Shown here piece by piece: positions 30,355 to 51,200 of a stretch of DNA of 64,000 nt. The stretch is from Sminthopsis crassicaudata (lineage: Eukaryota). The notes below the pieces were generated by a model. The model was not told the origin of the DNA. It did not search any database and was given only the letters and a program-made list of their open reading frames with translations. How positions within the stretch are numbered: the first letter of the stretch is position 1; the number at the start of each line of letters is the position of its first letter. The position numbers and the translations under genes were made by a program. The stretch covers positions 71,260,937-71,324,936 of the forward strand of contig NC_133617.1 of assembly GCF_048593235.1 (NCBI RefSeq), written 5' to 3'.

Positions 30355-33300
30355 CTCTTTCCGCCAAGGACTTTCTGCATTGTACATACTTATTTAACGC
30401 AGCAAAAGAACAATAGCATTTTCACCAAGGACTCAAAACACAGAAGACAAACTTGTAGCTTTCTGGCGCCAGCGGATGATTCTTCAAGACTTTTTATACC
30501 TTGAGCACTTGACTTCTGAGACTTATTAGTATGTGGTTTACTGTTTCGATCTTTTTCCTCCCTACCACCCTCCTTTTCCAATCCTTCATCCACCCTTCCC
30601 TTTCTTCCTCATCACTTCTGGGAAGTAAAGAACTCAACTAAATAGTTGGAGGATTTTTGTTTCTTCTTTTTAATTAAAAAGACAGGTTAGGAAATTGAGA
30701 AATGACTTCTCCCTGAGTTGTACCCAAGTCCGGTATTGGTGCTGCCATCTTTTCTAAGGGTCTCTCTGGTTTGATATGCAATAGCATCTTTTGGGGAAAT
30801 CCATTTTTGTCCTCTGGGTATGGGAAGGGCTTGTCAGAAACATCTCCCCTTCTGGAGATGGGGCTAGTGGGTTTTATTGGAGTTCTTAGTGGCTCCCCTT
30901 TTATTTCATCCTGTAATATATTGGGCTCTTGTAGTCTGGGTGGTACTGGCAGGTGGCACTGGACTTTGGAGCTCAAAGGAGTTTGACATGTTTCTCACTT
31001 TTTCTGTAGACTAATCTCCTCTGCCCAGGTGCCCCTGTGACATTTGTCTGCCTAAGTCTTTTATTTCTCTCTCCCTGCAGATATGCTTATCCCCTTCTCT
31101 GGGGCCCCTTTGAATTCTTATGACCTTCAAAGGGAGTTCCAACATCAGAGATTTCTATTGTAACTGGTTGGCCTGCTGTGAGGCCAATATCTGTGCCAAC
31201 CCCCTCACCTTCAGGGCAAGCAAGACTCTTCTAAACTCATTTAAAAAAAAATAACGGTGTCCACATGCCCTAAATCCAGGTATCCATGTTCCCCTTTACC
31301 CCCAGCCCACACCACACTTAAACCTCTGGCTTGCCCCATTGCATCCCCTTCACCAGTGTAATGCTTTTGAGTATGTATTTTCCTCTGAAGAACGTTCTTG
31401 TCTAAGGCCATGCTTCAGGGATACCTCAAATTTAACTTTCTGATTTTTGCCTTTATTGGAACTATTCCCCTTTGGCCTATATTTAGGTGCCTGGGGAAAT
31501 GTGGTGGGGCAAGTGTTTTCTGTGTATTCTAATGGGAAAATGTTGAAGGGATAGTTCCTTTGATCCAGGGTGTCTCTTGCCCTTTGGCTAGGGAAAGCGA
31601 ACCTGACTGGGAAGTGAAGACTTCCCTTTGCCTCTGAATGATGTTTCTCTAATCCCAGTTTGATGCCCTAGGTAGCTTTGGGAGCAAGTTTTACCCCCAA
31701 AGGCTGGTTGGGGCTTTTGCTCCTTGTACTTTTCCTTTTTCTTTCCTCAAAGTCCCCTTCTCTCTCCCCCCTCCCATAGCATGGATGGTGCTTGTCCCTG
31801 GACAGTGAGGTAATGCTTCTGGGATGCAGGGGGGTGGTAAGAGGTGTAGTAGGGGTGTAGTTCCTACTCTCCTGTGGTGCTGCTCTGCTTGTCTGAATTT
31901 GGAGTAGCCATTGGTTACTTTGCCTTCTTCTGGCTCCCTTTCTCTACCCCACACATGTCCCTTTGTGTGGCTCCTTTCCCTTTCCCTAAGGAATTAATGT
32001 TTAAAAGTGCTGACTTTAAATGAAAATAAAAAAGTGATCTAAGAGCTGCCTGTATGTGTTCCTTCTGGAGGCAGCTTCTGACCCCTGCTTGGAGTCTCAG
32101 GCTTGAGATCACAGGCTCATAAATGTGGAGCTTGGAAGGGACCTTAGCGCCCACCTAGTCCAATCTAAATTTTAGGAAACTGTCTCTTTAAAAGATTGTA
32201 CAAGGTCACACTTTCACAAGAGGTAAAAAGTCTGCTTTTGAATCCAAAAAACACATTGACTAGCTTGTTCTTCCTGCTTTCATTTCTTAACTGCCAGGCC
32301 CCAGGGAGAATGAAGTCTGCTGATAACTTGGTGCCCTGGCAGCTGTTTTCTGGGAATGCCCTAGGCCCTATGAGAACCTGCATCCTAAATAGCCTTCACC
32401 AGCTGTGGATATGAGGCACTAGGCTTCTTGAACTCTGCCCTAAGTTCATCAGGAAAGTAATGGGATAAGATAGGATCTGAGCTCAGTGCAACACCCTGCA
32501 AGATCCTAGTCTTTACAGAGAAAACACTGCCCTGAGCTTGCTCAGAAGTGAAGAGTAACTATCCACTGTTTGAAGTGAGCCAAATTGTAGTCTTCCAAGA
32601 CATCCCTGTATCTGTGACCATCCTTTCTTAGGAAACCATTGGAATTTGGATTCTCATTCATTTTAGGTTTAATGTAACAGTAGGACTGAATGCCTCTGAA
32701 GGTTTTCTCCAACCCTGATTCCCATTGCAAACAGCACAGGGGGTCCCGTTTTATTTGCAACACATTTTATTGCTTATCTTTTACATGATCAGGGGCCCAG
32801 TTCATCTCTTCTACTGGAACTAGCCCAGAGATAATCATTAATGAAGCTCCTCTCTAGTCACCCTTCCCCTACATTGGGGGTAGCCTGGGAATACCCAAAA
32901 TGACCAGACAAGAGCCCCTGCCAGCAGAAAGGAGGGCTATGCCCTGGGATTGGGGGGAAGAGTCTTGTCTATGTTGAAGGCAGTAGTTCTCCTCTGGTGA
33001 GCCATTATGTGTGAAACCATGTCATGCTGCTTCCCTCTCTGCATCCCTGCTCCACAGAATTAGTTTAGCTTAAAAAAATAAACCCCAAACCTAAGGAACC
33101 CTGTTCCTCAAAGTAGGTCATACATGACCCCACTGTCCTCAGTACTAAACCAGGGGCTTTAAGGCAAGCAAGATTCAACCTGTCCAGGGAGTAAGGGAAG
33201 GACAGACGAATATCCCAATTCTATCTGCCCAGCTTTCAGGATTATGAAAGAACAGAGTAGAGATGTTTAGTGACCAAAGTTGACCCAACTTGGGAGGGAC

Positions 33301-33951
33301 CAGGATTCTGACCCAAAAAGGTATGTCTGGTTGAAGTGAGGTAGAAGAAGAGAGACTAAAGGTTCCTTTTCATGTCACCAGATGGTATAGGGGGCAGGTA
33401 ACAAGATCCAAAACATCAAGCTTGTTAGTAAGTTTTCTGATTATCATTATCTTACCAGCAAAACCCCAAGCAGAGAGGGAACCAAGGTAATCTGTTCCTC
33501 CCACACCCTTACCACCCCCATCCTACTGGGCTTTAGCTAGTGGACATAACTCCTGTAATCAGGATTTAAAAGGATTTTTCTCCCATCACCTTTAGGAGCA
33601 GCTCAGGTACTGGGGCTTCAGGACTCAATGTTATTGGGTGAGAAAAATTAGCTTTCAGGATCATCTTTAAAAACTCAGCAGTAAATGGGGATGGGGGAGG
33701 AAACTGTAGTTACTTAACCCCCCAAAAGTGAAACTGAGCTAGGGATGACATACTTAGTATGCACTTGGCCTGGCTCAGGCCAGGACACCCATGGAGCCAC
33801 AACCTCTTGAGTGGGCGCCGCCAAGTCAGGCTCAGGCATTCTTTGATATGTTCCCCAAATATGAAAAATGTCTAGCTCCAGTAGCTGCTGCTTTCCCCTT
33901 GGGGCTCACCTGAGTAGGCCTGGGGGACATGTTGGCTGCCAGGCTCCATAT

Positions 33952-36004
33952 TCAGCTTGTCTCATAGGAAGAAAGCAGGGCTGTGTCCACTGGCTCCATG
34001 CAAGAGGGACATGTGAGGGAGCGCATGAGCCAGTCATCAATGCAGTGGACGTGGTAGGTATGCAGGCATGGCAAGAAGCGTATGGCATCCCCATACACAA
34101 AGTCCAACATGCAGATCACACACCTACGGGGACCAGGGATGGATGAATGTAGCACCAGTTCTTACCCTCTTCTTCACCCACCCACAGCCCACCCCCTCTA
34201 TGCCCAGCATCTCAGCTCCGATTGCCACAGAAGCCTCCCCTTGAGTACCCAGACTTGAACTATACTGTTGACTGAAGAGACTAGGGCCTGCCTTCAAGGA
34301 TCTCAGCATGAGGGAGTCAAGGAATGGCAGACCTTGGCCTTGCTCTTGGGAATCTGGAGAAAACAGAAAAGTAGAAGATCCTGGCCCTGCCTTTTAGTTC
34401 ACAGTTTGGGACAGACCCAAAACCTGGAAGCTCATTAGGAGCTGTCAAACTTGAGGGACTGGAGTGAATTTAGATGAACTCCAAGAAAAACCCAGTTGGG
34501 ATTGAGCTCAAGGATATGGTCAAGATTAACATGGGTAGGTCTCGGGGCCTGGGTGTTTCCCAGACTTCCCTCCTAAAAAGAAAAAGAGTGAGAGCCTCAC
34601 TACTGAGGGACCTCAGGTTTCAGCTTCCAGGAGGACTGGGCTGCAACATTCCCTTCAGGAGCCGGGGGTATCCTTGTCCTGGTCCCCACCCTTACTCTTT
34701 CATTTTCTTTTCTGACCCCTCAGAGCCAGGGTCGAAGATGCCCTTGGGCAGGTGCTGGATGAGGCCAATTCTCTGGGCGATGAGGATCTGCTCCTCCTCT
34801 GTGAGCTGTGCGGCCAGTCTGCTCTGGCTCGGAGATGGGTGGTACACTGGGATTGGCTCCCGTCCCTGGGGGATGGGGACAGGATATTACATGGCAACTT
34901 GTCCCTGGGGAACTTCTCTTTCAACCTGCCTGTATCTAGTTCCCTATGGGGCTTGGCTTCAAGTGGTCTCGCTTTAAGGGATCTATGAGCCCTGTACCCT
35001 CTGCATCTCTTCTACTGTTTCCCAGGGATCCTAATCCCTCGAGTGCTCCACTTCTGAATGGGACCAAGACCTCCTTCCTCTATGTCACTACTGTCCTGCT
35101 GACTGCAATAAACTCCCCCATCTCTGTGACTGGATCTAGAGCAGGAGAGGCCCCAGAGATCATTTAAACCGACACTTTCGTTTTCTATAGAGGAAAACAG
35201 GGACACAGACTTAGCCAAGCTCACAGGGCTGGTAAACAGGCAGCGAGAATTCAGAAGATGTTCTGAATCCTTACTCCTCCTGCCTTATTCAATTATAGGG
35301 CTTCTGTGCTTCTCTTGTTCTGGGATTTCTAATCAGTCCCTCTAACCCCAGTCCCGACCTTGTCTGGTGTGGTAAATCCCAAAGGCCCCTCCTTTCCCAA
35401 CTCTATCATGTCCTTTACTCTGCAGGGTGAAAGCAGCTTCCAAAGGCTTTCTCTGACTACAGTACAGGGCGGGGTGGTGGGTGTCAGAGTACTACATCTC
35501 TGGGGGGGTGGGGGCAGGGGTGAGATGCTTGAGGTTCCCTATGCTTGGCCCTGCCTTGTTTTTCTGAGGAACTAGGCCGTTGGTCCCTGGAACTAGGCCA
35601 GTCTCTTCTGGGACAGGGGGTGGGCCACAGCAGTTGCTGGAGTTCTCTAGATCAAAGCTCTGCCTGGTCTCTCGGGAGTGAAGCGGACACAGGGATGCCC
35701 TGACCCCCAGGCCTGCCCTGCCCCTCCGGGGCCCTGGGGGTGACGGCAGAGGCCGGGTTCCTCTGTGCTCAGCCCTTCCCTGCCTCTCTGGGCCGCAGTG
35801 TCAGATGGGCCGGTTCCTCGATTCCTAGCCTGGTCTGTCCAGCGCGGTGCCCATCCTCTGGGAGGGTGGGGGCGGCGGCGGGTCCCCGGGGGAGCTGCTT
35901 CCCTCCCCATAGTCGTTGAGCAACGACAGAAGGTCGGTAACTCCGGTCCCCACCTCGTCCCCAGCCCTGATGCCGGACCGCTGAGAAGACAGGCAGTTCC
36001 CCAT
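33952..36004 (-). CDS. RNF11-like RING-H2 protein (intron-containing RNF11 paralogue); exon 1 donor uncertain
   Basis: Exon 1 starts at ATG 36004 (MGNCLSSQ...DLLSLLNDYGEG...PPPPPPSQ; RNF11-equivalent end at 35858). Exon 2 is 34865-34696 (170 nt, cag/gtaagg). Exon 3 is 34123-33952 (CVIC...CLHTYHVHC...CPSC...SSYETS*). Two AATAAA on the minus strand at 32771-32766 and 32755-32750. Confidence 0.85.
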
Positions 36005-36350
36005 GCCCGGCCCGGCCCACTCAGCGGCGGCCAGGGCCCCTCCTTCTAGGCTCCCAGGCCCCGGCGTCCGTTTCAGCTCCAGAGGCCCCGGACAGCCCGA
36101 GCCCCGCCATGGTCCCTCCACGGCCGCGGGGGCTCTGGGCCCAACTTGGACTCACCGCTGTTTACAATCCCAGACGGAAGTGCTGCAGCTCGCGGCGCAG
36201 AGGATCGCGGGGAATGTAGTTACCGGCGCTCTCGGGGAAGGGGCGTGAAACTGAGCGCTGAACTGAGCTCGTCATGCGCATGTGCACGCGCAGGTGAGGC
36301 GCCTCCCCTAGATTCCGTGCGGGCGGAGGTAGAGGGGCGGGAACCACGTG
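35700..36350 (-). promoter_or_regulatory. CpG-island promoter of the RNF11-like gene
   Basis: CpG-rich. ETS CGGAAGTG near 36175, ZNF143/THAP11-like ACTACATTCCC (-) near 36210-36221, NRF1-like TGCGCATGTGCA near 36275. Confidence 0.65.
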
Positions 36351-37479
36351 TTCTTGCTGACCCTGGACACTTAAGGTGATTTCAGAAGTGACCTGGGTCT
36401 TATATTATCATTATTCTTGAATCTTTCTTAACTCCCTTAAGTGATTGGGACTCCCAGCCTGGGACTGATCTCATGCTTTCATCCTGGTACCTTCCTCCCT
36501 ACCCCCATGCTGCGTGTAGGGCGTCCTAGCTTTGAGAAATATCTGTGGAAAGAATGAAGGCAAAAGCCTGAATCCCTGGATAGGACAGAAGGTCTTTCCC
36601 CTGCCCTGCCTCATTCTTATCATAACTGCCCTTTCACTGGAGCACGCAGGGCCTGGATCCCCGGTCCCGCCCTCGGCCTTGCCCTTCGGGGTCCTTGTAA
36701 ACCTAGCAGTCTCTGGGAAGCGAAGGCCTTCCTTGGACCTAGGCTGCAAAGCCCGGGCGGCCAGGGGAGCTCACAGGGTCTGACTAGAACCTCTTTTATT
36801 TAGGAGACACTAAAACTGAGGCGAGGGAGATCTTTATCTAAAGTTAGGCAACAGAGCAAGGATCTCAGGGTCTCTGACTTCACGTGGTTCTTAGCCCTCA
36901 CCGGGGAGTTGGAGGGAGTGCAGAGCAATGTTCCTGCTTCCTCTTGATGGCCCAAACAATGGAAATCCAGCAGGACCTCCTCTCCAAGCACAGCCACTTA
37001 GGGCGCCCAGGAGCCTCAATCCAAGATCCTCATATCTAGAGGTGCCACAAGGGGTCCCAGGCCACCCTGCCTCCCTCTCCCGTTCTGGCTGTCCTGCCAG
37101 GATAAACAGCATGGCTCAGTCCCTTCCCCCTCGGGCCTTTGTGTTTACTGTCCCCATCCTCCCCTACTTCCTAAACTCTGGAGCGTTTGATGGATCGAAG
37201 CAATTGGGGGAGGAGGAGAACCTTCCCACGGCTCTGGCTCTGCCCCCCAGGGTGAGGACACAGCCCAGAGAACAAACAACGTGCGAGCGACCTCTTGCAC
37301 CCGCCCTGGGGAAGGCCCGGGCACGGGACAGGAGGGTTTAGGGAGCCGGCGGCCCGGGGAGGATGGGTATGGGAAGAAGGGCTTGTACGCCGAGGAATCT
37401 GCAGCCACTTCCGCCACCTTATCTAGGAGGAAACAAGGCAGCTCGGGGACTTGGAGGCCAGCGTGGAAGAGGTGCCCAG

Positions 37480-49719: not shown

Positions 49720-51200
49720 GAGGCTAGATAGTGCACGAGCAGTTTCAAGGCTCCGCCCCGAAGCAGCGGAAGTGAGGTGTCCTGTTTCCGGCCCGTCGGT
49801 GGTTCTACAGCTGTTGTGCTACGTCATCAGTCGGTGCCGGAAGTAACGTCCCGGTGCCTTGGAGACGAAATGCAGCTGGGGCGGCGGCGGCCCAGCGGGT
49901 GACAGGTGGGAGGTGGAGGGGCTCCGTGGGGAGGCGCCTCAGTCCGCCCTGGGCTCTCCCTCCCGTACTTCGGGCCCCCGCCACCTTTGGCCCGGGCCCC
50001 CACGTAGCGCGGTGTGGTGCGTTGGTAAGAGCCCTGGATTGGATTGAGAAGACCTGGATTCGAGTGCTGCCTCTGCCATTTACTGCTGGCGTGTTACCGG
50101 GAGAGTCGCTTCCCTCCTCTGAGCCGTAAAGTGAGGGGGCGGGTCAGGGAGCGCACGAGGGTTCTTCCAGCCTTCGCTCTGTGATCGTATGCTCTCAGGG
50201 CGTTTCCCCCCCCATCCTCGGCCCCACAGGGTCTTCCCCCCGGCATGGAGCCACCCCCAGACGACAACCAGGACTGGGATGAGGACTCGGACCCTGAGGC
50301 AGATCCGGATGTCCAAGCCCAGGAGTACATCGACCGAGTTCTGGGTTCGCCCAGCCCGGCCCCGGCCCGCACGGTCCTGGCGCCCCCGCCAGTGGTCAGC
50401 CCCCGCCCACCTCCGGCGGAGCTGTGGCGGGAATCCCTGCGGTCCCCCGGCGGGGAGCCCGGCCCGGACGCATCCGGCCTGCTGGGTCTGCCGCTGGAGC
50501 TAATCCTGGAGATCTGCTCCTACCTAGAGGCGAGGCTGGTGCTGGGGGTCCTGCCCCTGGTGTGCCGCTCCCTCCGGGACATCGTCCAGGACCAGGTTAT
50601 GTGGAAGATCCGCGTGCAGAAACTCCTGGGGGGGGCCTACCCCGTGGTGGAAGGTGCGGGGGCCGGGGGGAGGGGCCCGACCCTGCGCTGACCCCAGGAC
50701 TTCACCAGGGTGGGGGGAAAGATGGGGAGGGACGCGGAACCTTCAGGGTCGAGCCGTTTTCCTTGGCTGAATTAGGGAGTGAGGCTGCCGGGAAGGGAGG
50801 GGGGCGGCGGCCAGAGAGGAGACAACTTTCGGATGGGGCAGGGCTCAGACCTCGCTATTTCCCCCCACCCCGGCCCCCCAGAGGAGGACTTTGACTGGCC
50901 GGCGGCCTGCATTGAATTAGAGGAGCACCTGGCCCGCTGGGCAGATGACGGGCGCAGGGCCGAATACTTCTGCTTGTCGGACGGCCACTTTGCCTCCATC
51001 GACTCGGTGCTCCTGCTGCAGGTGAGGGCCAGGCCGGCCTCCTTGGGCGCGGGAGGGGGTCAGCAGCCTGGCCCCCGCCCAGGCGACGCGCCCAGTTTCT
51101 ATGACTAGCTCTGCCAAGCGTAACCCCGCAGGGCCGGAGAGCAGGTGAGAGGAGGGGCCTGGATGTGAGAACGGGACACTGGAAGCTCCCTGGCTTGGCT
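49720..51200 (+). promoter_or_regulatory. CpG-island promoter of FBXW9
   Basis: ETS motifs (GCGGAAGTG near 49767, CCGGAAGT near 49837) and a half-CRE CTACGTCAT. Probable 5' UTR intron with acceptor at 50229. Confidence 0.7.

What the first reader, a model, noticed from the sequence alone, without database searches (positions are those of the whole stretch)
35825..36004. RNF11-like exon 1 has lost the PPxY tyrosine and the expected splice donor
Seen: exon 1 ends PPPPPPSQ (TCC where RNF11 has Tyr), followed by CAG|AGGATGGG with no GT. Read-through reaches TAG at 35827-35825 after 59 aa. The only good phase-0 donor is upstream, GAG|GTGGGG at 35954/35953. Using it would give a 130-aa protein that keeps the acylation signal and RING but drops the N-terminal dileucine and proline-rich segment. 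Exons 2-3 have no disablements. Inference, three options: (a) a rewired paralogue uncoupled from NEDD4-family ligases (ITCH/SMURF2), possibly a decoy; (b) early pseudogenisation, mirroring the eutherian loss; (c) a local assembly error such as a missing GTG.
Basis: partly seen in the sequence, partly recalled or inferred. Interest (0 to 1): 0.75.

Follow-up and report, generated by a model that had tools for sequence, protein, structure and literature searches.

The report
RNF11-like gene with a shifted splice donor
In this marsupial and two dasyurid relatives, a single C-to-T change made a new splice site inside exon 1 of an RNF11-like ubiquitin-ligase gene, so the protein loses its sorting and WW-binding motifs but keeps its membrane anchor and RING domain; it is neither an assembly error nor a dying gene.

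Summary
In the window that site reads AGG|AT, a G>A at donor position +1 (35854).

Contigs from two other samples and studies match the window exactly across exon 1, so this is not an assembly error.

All three dasyuromorph sequences have GTG there. Koala and Dromiciops DNA read GCG, and all eight non-dasyurid marsupial proteins have Ala. A CpG transition therefore created the donor in the common ancestor.

The skipped 99 nt (acidic di-leucine plus proline-rich segment) then decayed differently in each lineage:
- Window: old donor GT>AT.
- Antechinus: old donor GT>GC.
- Devil: a 1-nt deletion.

Exons 2-3 are under strong purifying selection (pN/pS 0.06-0.10), which argues against pseudogenisation.

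The PPxY tyrosine is also lost in koala, brushtail possum, wallaby, sugar glider and Dromiciops, so the loss is not special to this species.

I obtained no direct RNA evidence for the exon 1-2 junction in the window species. The scan had noted the gene before on this same window (s1-153252).

The parts
35954..36004 (-). Coding exon 1 as now spliced (17 codons, MGNCLSSQRSGIRAGDE). It keeps Gly2/Cys4 of the dual-acylation signal.
   Evidence: Identical to the first 17 aa of the Antechinus RefSeq model P0170.
35952..35953 (-). New phase-0 5' splice site, GAG|GTGGGG. It was created by GCG>GTG, a C>T change at a CpG.
   Evidence: GTG in the window, Antechinus and Sarcophilus; GCG in koala and Dromiciops. 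Ala at this residue in all 8 non-dasyurid marsupial proteins; predicted U1 duplex -9.4 against -5.0 kcal/mol.
35855..35953 (-). Intronised former 3' part of exon 1 (33 codons: VGTGVTDLLSLLNDYGEGSSSPGDPPPPPPSQR). It holds the acidic di-leucine motif and the proline-rich ex-PPxY segment.
   Evidence: The frame is still open in the window and Antechinus. The devil has a 1-nt deletion (equivalent to window 35893-35888).
35853..35854 (-). Position of the ancestral marsupial donor, now AT (AGG|ATGGGC). This is G>A at +1.
   Evidence: koala and Dromiciops AGG|GTGAGC, devil AGG|GTGGGC, Antechinus AGG|GCGGGC; the same letters in X1 and X10.
35825..35827 (-). TAG that ends the read-through frame of unspliced exon 1 (59 aa).
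34696..34865 (-). Exon 2 (GREPIPVYHP...KKMKE), the conserved RNF11 middle region.
   Evidence: Donor junction 34696|34123 seen in devil RNA contig X20. 93% identical to the koala and sugar glider orthologues.
33952..34123 (-). Exon 3: RING-H2 domain, C-terminal DTALL motif and the TGA stop.
   Evidence: Pfam zf-RING_2, 49.5 bits against a cutoff of 27.3. 88-91% identical to RNF11-like proteins.
35554..35560 (-). Conserved AAG|GCAGGG inside intron 1. The Ensembl devil model (P0166, no Met) uses it as a donor. It may be a minor or non-productive isoform.

Best explanation
This is the marsupial RNF11-like gene, the paralogue that sits next to an FBXW9-like gene. It is intact and under selection, and its exon 1 was shortened in the dasyuromorph ancestor. 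A C>T change at a CpG (GAG GCG > GAG GTG) created a phase-0 5' splice site 99 nt upstream of the ancestral donor. Splicing from 35954 to the unchanged acceptor at 34865 gives a 130-aa protein.

Kept: the N-terminal Gly2/Cys4 acylation signal, the conserved middle region, the RING-H2 domain and the C-terminal DxxLL motif.

Lost: the N-terminal acidic di-leucine motif, which in RNF11 binds AP-2 and GGA, and the proline-rich PPxY segment, which in RNF11 binds WW domains of NEDD4-type ligases.

Once the segment was skipped, it and the old donor were free to decay. They did so by a different lesion in each lineage; in this genome it is GT>AT at the old donor.

Shown here: the sequence states, their distribution across species, the constraint on exons 2-3, and the RefSeq models of relatives.

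Inferred: that the window species really uses the new donor, and that the product no longer engages WW-domain ligases or GGA/AP-2 through its N-terminus.
For: - New donor present in 3 of 3 dasyuromorph sequences and absent in koala and Dromiciops DNA. All 8 other marsupial proteins have Ala at that residue.
- RefSeq models XP_051827575.1 (Antechinus) and XP_012397555.1 (Sarcophilus) are 130 aa and join ...AG[D/T]E to GREPIPVYHP.
- Three different lesions affect the skipped part: window AGG|AT, Antechinus AGG|GC, devil 1-nt deletion. This means the shared new donor came first.
- Exons 2-3 have pN/pS 0.06-0.10 and 1-3% divergence, against 7-13% in introns.
- Devil RNA (X20) joins exon 2 to exon 3. 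Its exon-2 contig ends exactly 2 nt past the acceptor. That fits an upstream exon ending ...AG with a third-last base other than C (GAG|), and does not fit the old AGG| donor.
- The letters are confirmed in two further samples.
- Motif functions are taken from the RNF11 review PMC7697665.
Against: - No read or contig across the 35954|34865 junction was obtained for the window species. The RNA-like runs that hold the locus are colinear with the genome and look like DNA.
- I could not inspect the evidence behind the RefSeq models.
- The Ensembl devil model uses a different donor, AAG|GC at the equivalent of 35555, so other isoforms exist.
- The LSLLND core of the skipped segment is still identical in all three dasyuromorphs. 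This could mean the long isoform persisted for some time.
- The skipped segment also evolves fast where it is still coding (koala against Dromiciops 17%), so its rate is not diagnostic.
Confidence: 0.75

Rival explanations
1. Early pseudogenisation. With the ancestral donor destroyed, transcripts read through to the TAG. Only a 59-aa acylated peptide, or nothing, is made, and the RING exons are drifting.
For: The old donor is AT and the read-through stops after 59 aa. There is no direct junction evidence in this species.
Against: Exons 2-3 carry no disablement. They show 1 non-synonymous against 5 synonymous differences from Antechinus, across a divergence of 8-12% in the introns. Neutral drift would predict about 20 replacement changes. 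An in-frame donor older than the lesion exists and is the annotated one in two relatives.
Confidence: 0.1
2. The main transcripts use another 5' exon or donor, such as the conserved AAG|GC site at 35555/35554 of the Ensembl devil model. The RING frame would then lack the MGNC start and the locus would be largely non-coding or regulated by a upstream ORF.
For: Ensembl model P0166 starts without Met and maps to 35646-35555 before exon 2. The GC site and its surroundings are conserved in five marsupials. The end of the X20 exon-2 contig fits AAG| as well as GAG|.
Against: The frame upstream of that site contains stops and no ATG in the window. Such a transcript would not explain the purifying selection on exons 2-3. 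RefSeq gives the 130-aa model in two species.
Confidence: 0.1
3. Local assembly error, with missing or wrong bases at the donor.
For: The region is GC-rich and holds a proline-codon repeat, which is prone to errors.
Against: Contigs of X1 (sample S1, study P1) and X10 (sample S6, study P4) agree letter for letter over 35817-36116. Antechinus and devil assemblies show the same exon architecture.
Confidence: 0.02

Closest known systems
RNF11 (human/mouse, 154 aa RING-H2 E3 and adaptor of ITCH/SMURF2; review PMC7697665)
   Same: Three coding exons with the same phases. MGNC acylation start, PVYHP...LTEEEQI.IAQRIGLIQHLPKG middle region, RING-H2 domain and C-terminal DxxLL. About 77-84% identical in exons 2-3 (from hits; the percentage against human RNF11 is my estimate from those hits).
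   Different: A different locus, next to an F-box/FBXW9-like gene. No PPxY tyrosine. The predicted product lacks the N-terminal DxxLL motif and the proline-rich segment.
'RING finger protein 11-like' of other marsupials (koala XP_020850742.1, wombat XP_027706863.1, Monodelphis XP_001362925.1 and others, 163-173 aa)
   Same: Orthologous gene. Exons 2-3 are 93-97% identical. They share the marsupial-specific RSGTGAGDEAGAGAA insertion in exon 1.
   Different: They splice at the ancestral AGG|GT donor and keep the di-leucine and proline-rich segment. Opossums and wombat still have PPPY.
RefSeq 130-aa models of Antechinus flavipes (XP_051827575.1) and Sarcophilus harrisii (XP_012397555.1)
   Same: The same upstream donor and the same product, apart from one or three residues.
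   Different: The state of the abandoned donor and segment differs: GC in Antechinus, GT plus a 1-nt deletion in the devil, AT here.
Intronisation or 5' splice-site creation by point mutation (for example in retrogenes, PMC3002245 and PMC3565874; seen only as titles and abstracts)
   Same: Exonic coding sequence becomes intron after a new GT arises.
   Different: Here it happens in an old multi-exon gene, stays in frame, and removes two defined interaction motifs.

Membership tests
RNF11 family | RING-H2 domain at the C-terminus | tested here: met
   Pfam zf-RING_2, 49.5 bits (cutoff 27.3), on the exon 3 translation.
RNF11 family | Conserved middle region (PVYHP..LTEEEQI.IAQRIGLIQHLPKG) | tested here: met
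   Exon 2 aligns at 92-94% with marsupial RNF11-like proteins. The exon 3 query retrieved only RNF11 and RNF11-like proteins.
RNF11 family | N-terminal MGxC dual acylation signal (Gly2 myristoylation, Cys4 palmitoylation) | tested here: met
   MGNCLSS at 36004-35984. The motif definition is from PMC7697665. The modification itself was not tested.
RNF11 family | PPxY motif for WW domains (Tyr40 in RNF11) | tested here: not met
   PPPPPPSQR contains no Tyr, and the segment lies downstream of the donor now in use.
RNF11 family | N-terminal acidic di-leucine motif (DxxLL/DxxxLL) | tested here: not met
   DLLSLLND is encoded at about 35935-35912, inside the skipped 99 nt. It is absent from the 130-aa models of relatives. 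It would be present only if a long isoform were made.
Unitary pseudogene | Frameshifts or stops in formerly coding exons, and relaxed dN/dS | tested here: not met
   Exons 2-3 are open, with pN/pS 0.06-0.10. Lesions are confined to the skipped segment and the old donor.
Evolutionary 5' splice-site shift (exon shortening) | A new GT created by substitution, in frame with the old acceptor, and shared by a clade | tested here: met
   GCG>GTG in 3 of 3 dasyuromorphs, phase 0.
Evolutionary 5' splice-site shift (exon shortening) | The new junction is seen in transcripts of this species | tested here: inconclusive
   The one read-laying run gave only genome-colinear contigs for organism A. Devil RNA shows the exon 2-3 joint and an exon-2 contig end compatible with GAG|.

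The most novel reading that the evidence does not exclude
The RNF11 paralogue has undergone a functional shift away from NEDD4-type (WW-domain) ligases across Australidelphian marsupials. The PPxY tyrosine was lost at least four separate times: koala Cys, Trichosurus Cys, wallaby Ser, Petaurus Pro/Gln, Dromiciops His, dasyuromorphs Ser-Gln. Dasyuromorphs then removed the whole di-leucine/proline module by inventing a splice donor. The result would be a membrane-anchored RING protein that acts independently of ITCH/SMURF2 and GGA/AP-2, for example by competing with RNF11 for E2s or for partners in the A20 complex.
Probability: 0.3. Interest if true: 0.5.

Novelty: new variant of a known kind. 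Interest (0 to 1): 0.4.

Why it matters
This is a clean natural experiment. One point mutation removes two well-studied interaction modules of an RNF11-type ligase (AP-2/GGA sorting and WW-domain binding) while selection keeps the remainder. Three lineages then record the event by decaying the abandoned piece in three different ways.

It indicates which parts of the RNF11 scaffold can work alone. It also gives annotators a rule for this locus in dasyuromorph genomes: a 130-aa model, not a broken gene.

The practical importance is modest. The paralogue is absent from the eutherian hits seen here and has not been studied functionally.

Tried and rejected
- Word search with the exon 1 frame came back blank. 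This was a false negative, because koala P0129 shares several 5-mers with the query.
- Runs X1 and X10 were chosen in the hope that they were RNA. Their contigs are colinear with the genome through both introns and the promoter, so they serve only as independent DNA-level confirmation. X19 laid nothing.
- Substitution rate of the skipped segment as a test of lost coding constraint: rejected. The segment is almost as fast in koala against Dromiciops, where it is still coding.
- GC-AG rescue at 35829 (CAG|GCTAGG, phase 1) joined to the internal AG at 34849: considered from the sequence. It has no support in any relative's model.
- AT-AC (U12) reading of AGG|ATGGGC: no U12 donor consensus.
- Second window-specific GT at 35941 (GGA|GTTACC): weak and absent in relatives.
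- Apparent break in similarity upstream of 36358 suggested by the X20 loose end: this is just local divergence, and the flank is colinear with the devil and Antechinus.
- Literature searches for RNF11 + marsupial and for rnf11b found nothing on this gene. The hits were RNF113B or RNF144B.
- DNA of wombat, Monodelphis, wallaby, Trichosurus and Petaurus could not be fetched because the files were too large.
Exons were handled one at a time by reference, and dN/dS was counted exon by exon, leaving out the split codon.
- The large representative search, structure prediction and fold search were not used because they were not needed.

Full report
**What is in the window.** The gene lies on the minus strand.
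- An ATG at 36004 opens the frame MGNCLSSQRSGIRAGDEVGTGVTDLLSLLNDYGEGSSSPGDPPPPPPSQRMGTALDRPG, which stops at TAG 35827-35825.
- Exon 2 (34865-34696, GREPIPVYHP...KKMKE) follows a good acceptor and ends at GA|GTAAGG.
- Exon 3 (34123-33955, stop at 33954-33952) encodes a RING-H2 domain (Pfam zf-RING_2, 49.5 bits).
- No GT occurs between 35923 and 35745.
- The phase-0 GTs inside exon 1 are at 35953 (GACGAG|GTGGGG) and 35941 (GGA|GTTACC, weak).
- The window contains no N.

**Not an assembly error.** In the single read-laying run, a 4.9-kb contig of run X1 (sample S1, study P1) covers 33167-36400. Its only difference is at 33801. A 300-nt contig of X10 (sample S6, study P4) covers 35817-36116 with no difference. 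Neither comes from the sample flagged as the likely source of the assembly. Both runs are colinear with the genome through the introns and promoter, so they behave as DNA, not as spliced RNA.

**What the gene is.** The exon 3 frame retrieves only RNF11 and RNF11-like proteins. A turtle RNF11-like hit, used as the next query, brought in the marsupial proteins. Cluster look-up then gave named RefSeq entries for ten marsupials.
- Non-dasyurid marsupials have 163-173-aa proteins whose exon 1 ends ...PPP[Y/C/S/H]R, joined to GREPIPVYHP.
- Tyr is kept in Monodelphis, Gracilinanus and wombat.
- Tyr is replaced by Cys in koala and Trichosurus, Ser in wallaby, His in Dromiciops, and Pro/Gln in Petaurus.

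Because wombat keeps Tyr, the losses must be repeated. By my reading of the accepted marsupial tree there were at least four; this rests on established knowledge and was not computed here. Reptile, amphibian and tuatara RNF11-like proteins keep PPPY-Q. An F-box ORF at 50245-50688 fits the FBXW9/TNPO2 neighbourhood noted earlier by the scan (s1-153252). I did not test TRIR or TNPO2 themselves.

**The key result.** The two other dasyurid RefSeq models are 130 aa: Antechinus flavipes XP_051827575.1 and Sarcophilus harrisii XP_012397555.1. They read MGNCLSSQRSGIRAG[D/T]E, joined to GREPIPVYHP.

I fetched the genomic loci of Antechinus (L002), devil (L003), koala (L004) and Dromiciops (L005) and aligned them with the window.
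1. The ancestral marsupial donor is AGG|GTGAGC in koala and Dromiciops. The states at that site are:
   - Window: AGG|ATGGGC (35857-35855 | 35854-35853).
   - Antechinus: AGG|GCGGGC.
   - Devil: AGG|GTGGGC.
2. The devil has a 1-nt deletion in the segment between the two donors (equivalent to 35893-35888). Its old donor would therefore be out of frame.
3. At the upstream site all three dasyuromorphs read GAG|GTGGGG. Koala and Dromiciops read GAG|GCGGGG, and all eight non-dasyurid proteins have Ala there. A C>T transition at a CpG thus made the new donor. The predicted U1 pairing improves from -5.0 to -9.4 kcal/mol, comparable with -9.0 for the ancestral donor (a rough measure).

**Order of events.** The new donor is shared. 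The lesions of the old donor and segment are all different. The new donor therefore arose first, in a common ancestor, and the abandoned 99 nt then decayed independently.

The window species is an outgroup to devil + Antechinus. Intron 1 divergence is 12.7% and 12.0% against the window, compared with 7.2% between those two. The event is consequently at least as old as that deeper split.

The SQR ending is also shared by the three, so the tyrosine was already gone in their ancestor. Whether that happened before or after the donor arose cannot be told.

**Is the gene alive?** Counted exon by exon, with the split codon left out, exons 2-3 show the following:

| Comparison | Non-synonymous / synonymous differences | pN/pS |
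|---|---|---|
| Window vs Antechinus | 1 / 5 | 0.06 |
| Window vs devil | 2 / 6 | 0.10 |

Nucleotide divergence in these exons is 1-3%, against 7-13% in introns and the 3' UTR. Under neutrality roughly twenty replacement changes would be expected over this distance.

Run X20 is a true RNA library. Its contigs carry devil-specific letters at 34857, 34839 and 36307, and it contains the exon 2-exon 3 junction.

Its exon-2 contig stops exactly 2 nt beyond the acceptor. In a de Bruijn assembly that is where paths sharing only ...AG diverge. This fits GAG| (new donor) or AAG| (the GC site of the Ensembl model) and does not fit AGG| (old donor). It is weak evidence, it is indirect, and it comes from the devil, not from the window species.

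**What I could not show.** No transcript of the window species crossing 35954|34865 was seen. The evidence behind the RefSeq models is not visible to me.

An Ensembl devil model (A0A7N4PYS5, no initiator Met) instead joins a conserved AAG|GCAGGG site inside intron 1 (window 35555/35554) to exon 2. Other, probably non-productive, isoforms therefore exist.

The LSLLND core of the skipped segment is still identical in all three dasyuromorphs. This may be chance, or it may be a trace of a period when both donors were used. The rate of the skipped segment is not informative, because it is nearly as fast where it is still coding (17% koala-Dromiciops against 19-20% in introns).

**Mechanism proposed.** The motif functions below are taken from the RNF11 review PMC7697665.

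The 130-aa product keeps:
- Gly2 myristoylation and Cys4 palmitoylation, which give membrane anchoring.
- The conserved middle region.
- The RING-H2 domain.
- The C-terminal DTALL motif.

It lacks:
- The N-terminal acidic di-leucine motif, which in RNF11 binds AP-2 and the GGA VHS domains.
- The PPxY segment. In RNF11, Tyr40 is needed for the SMURF2 WW3 interaction.

The inference is a membrane-anchored RING protein that cannot be recruited by, or act as adaptor for, NEDD4-type ligases and is sorted differently. A decoy or competitor role is possible but untested.

**Comparison with what is known.** The 130-aa form already exists as automatic RefSeq models in two relatives. No paper in the searchable library discusses this paralogue. 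As far as I can see, three things are undescribed:
- The creation of the donor by a CpG transition.
- The three independent decays of the abandoned segment.
- The recurrent tyrosine loss.

I class this as a new variant of a known kind, of moderate interest.

Noticed in passing
L001:515-1833 (Logan contig of SRR18112698, 9.8 kb): A GC-rich RNF11-like copy from an unidentified species. It has a short reptile-type exon 1 ending PPPPYQ|GT, a noticeably diverged exon 2 (PTYHSVPGQSCLATQ...TGVFDLGTEPTDRKTKE), a marsupial-like RING exon, and an ArsA/GET3-like ORF 6 kb downstream. It could be a monotreme or a decaying copy.
   Followed up: partly
window 35520-35600 (-): A block inside intron 1 is conserved in five marsupials. 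It includes AAG|GC[A/G][A/G]GG at 35555/35554, which the Ensembl devil model uses as a donor to exon 2. It may be an alternative exon end or a regulatory element.
   Followed up: partly
window 33801: The assembly has A (+ strand) where runs X1 and X10 and all four other marsupials have C. This is an allele of the sequenced animal or a base error, and it lies in the 3' UTR.
   Followed up: partly
window 50245-50688 (+): An ORF with an F-box domain (F-box-like, 31.7 bits), fitting FBXW9 in the TNPO2/GNG14 neighbourhood.
   Followed up: no
window 34694-34867 and 36270-36358 (run X20): A metatranscriptomic run labelled with another organism holds Tasmanian-devil host RNA from this gene. It carries devil-specific letters at 34857, 34839 and 36307.
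   Followed up: yes
window 35941 (-): A window-specific second phase-0 GT (GGA|GTTACC), absent in Antechinus and the devil. It is a weak site and probably irrelevant.
   Followed up: no
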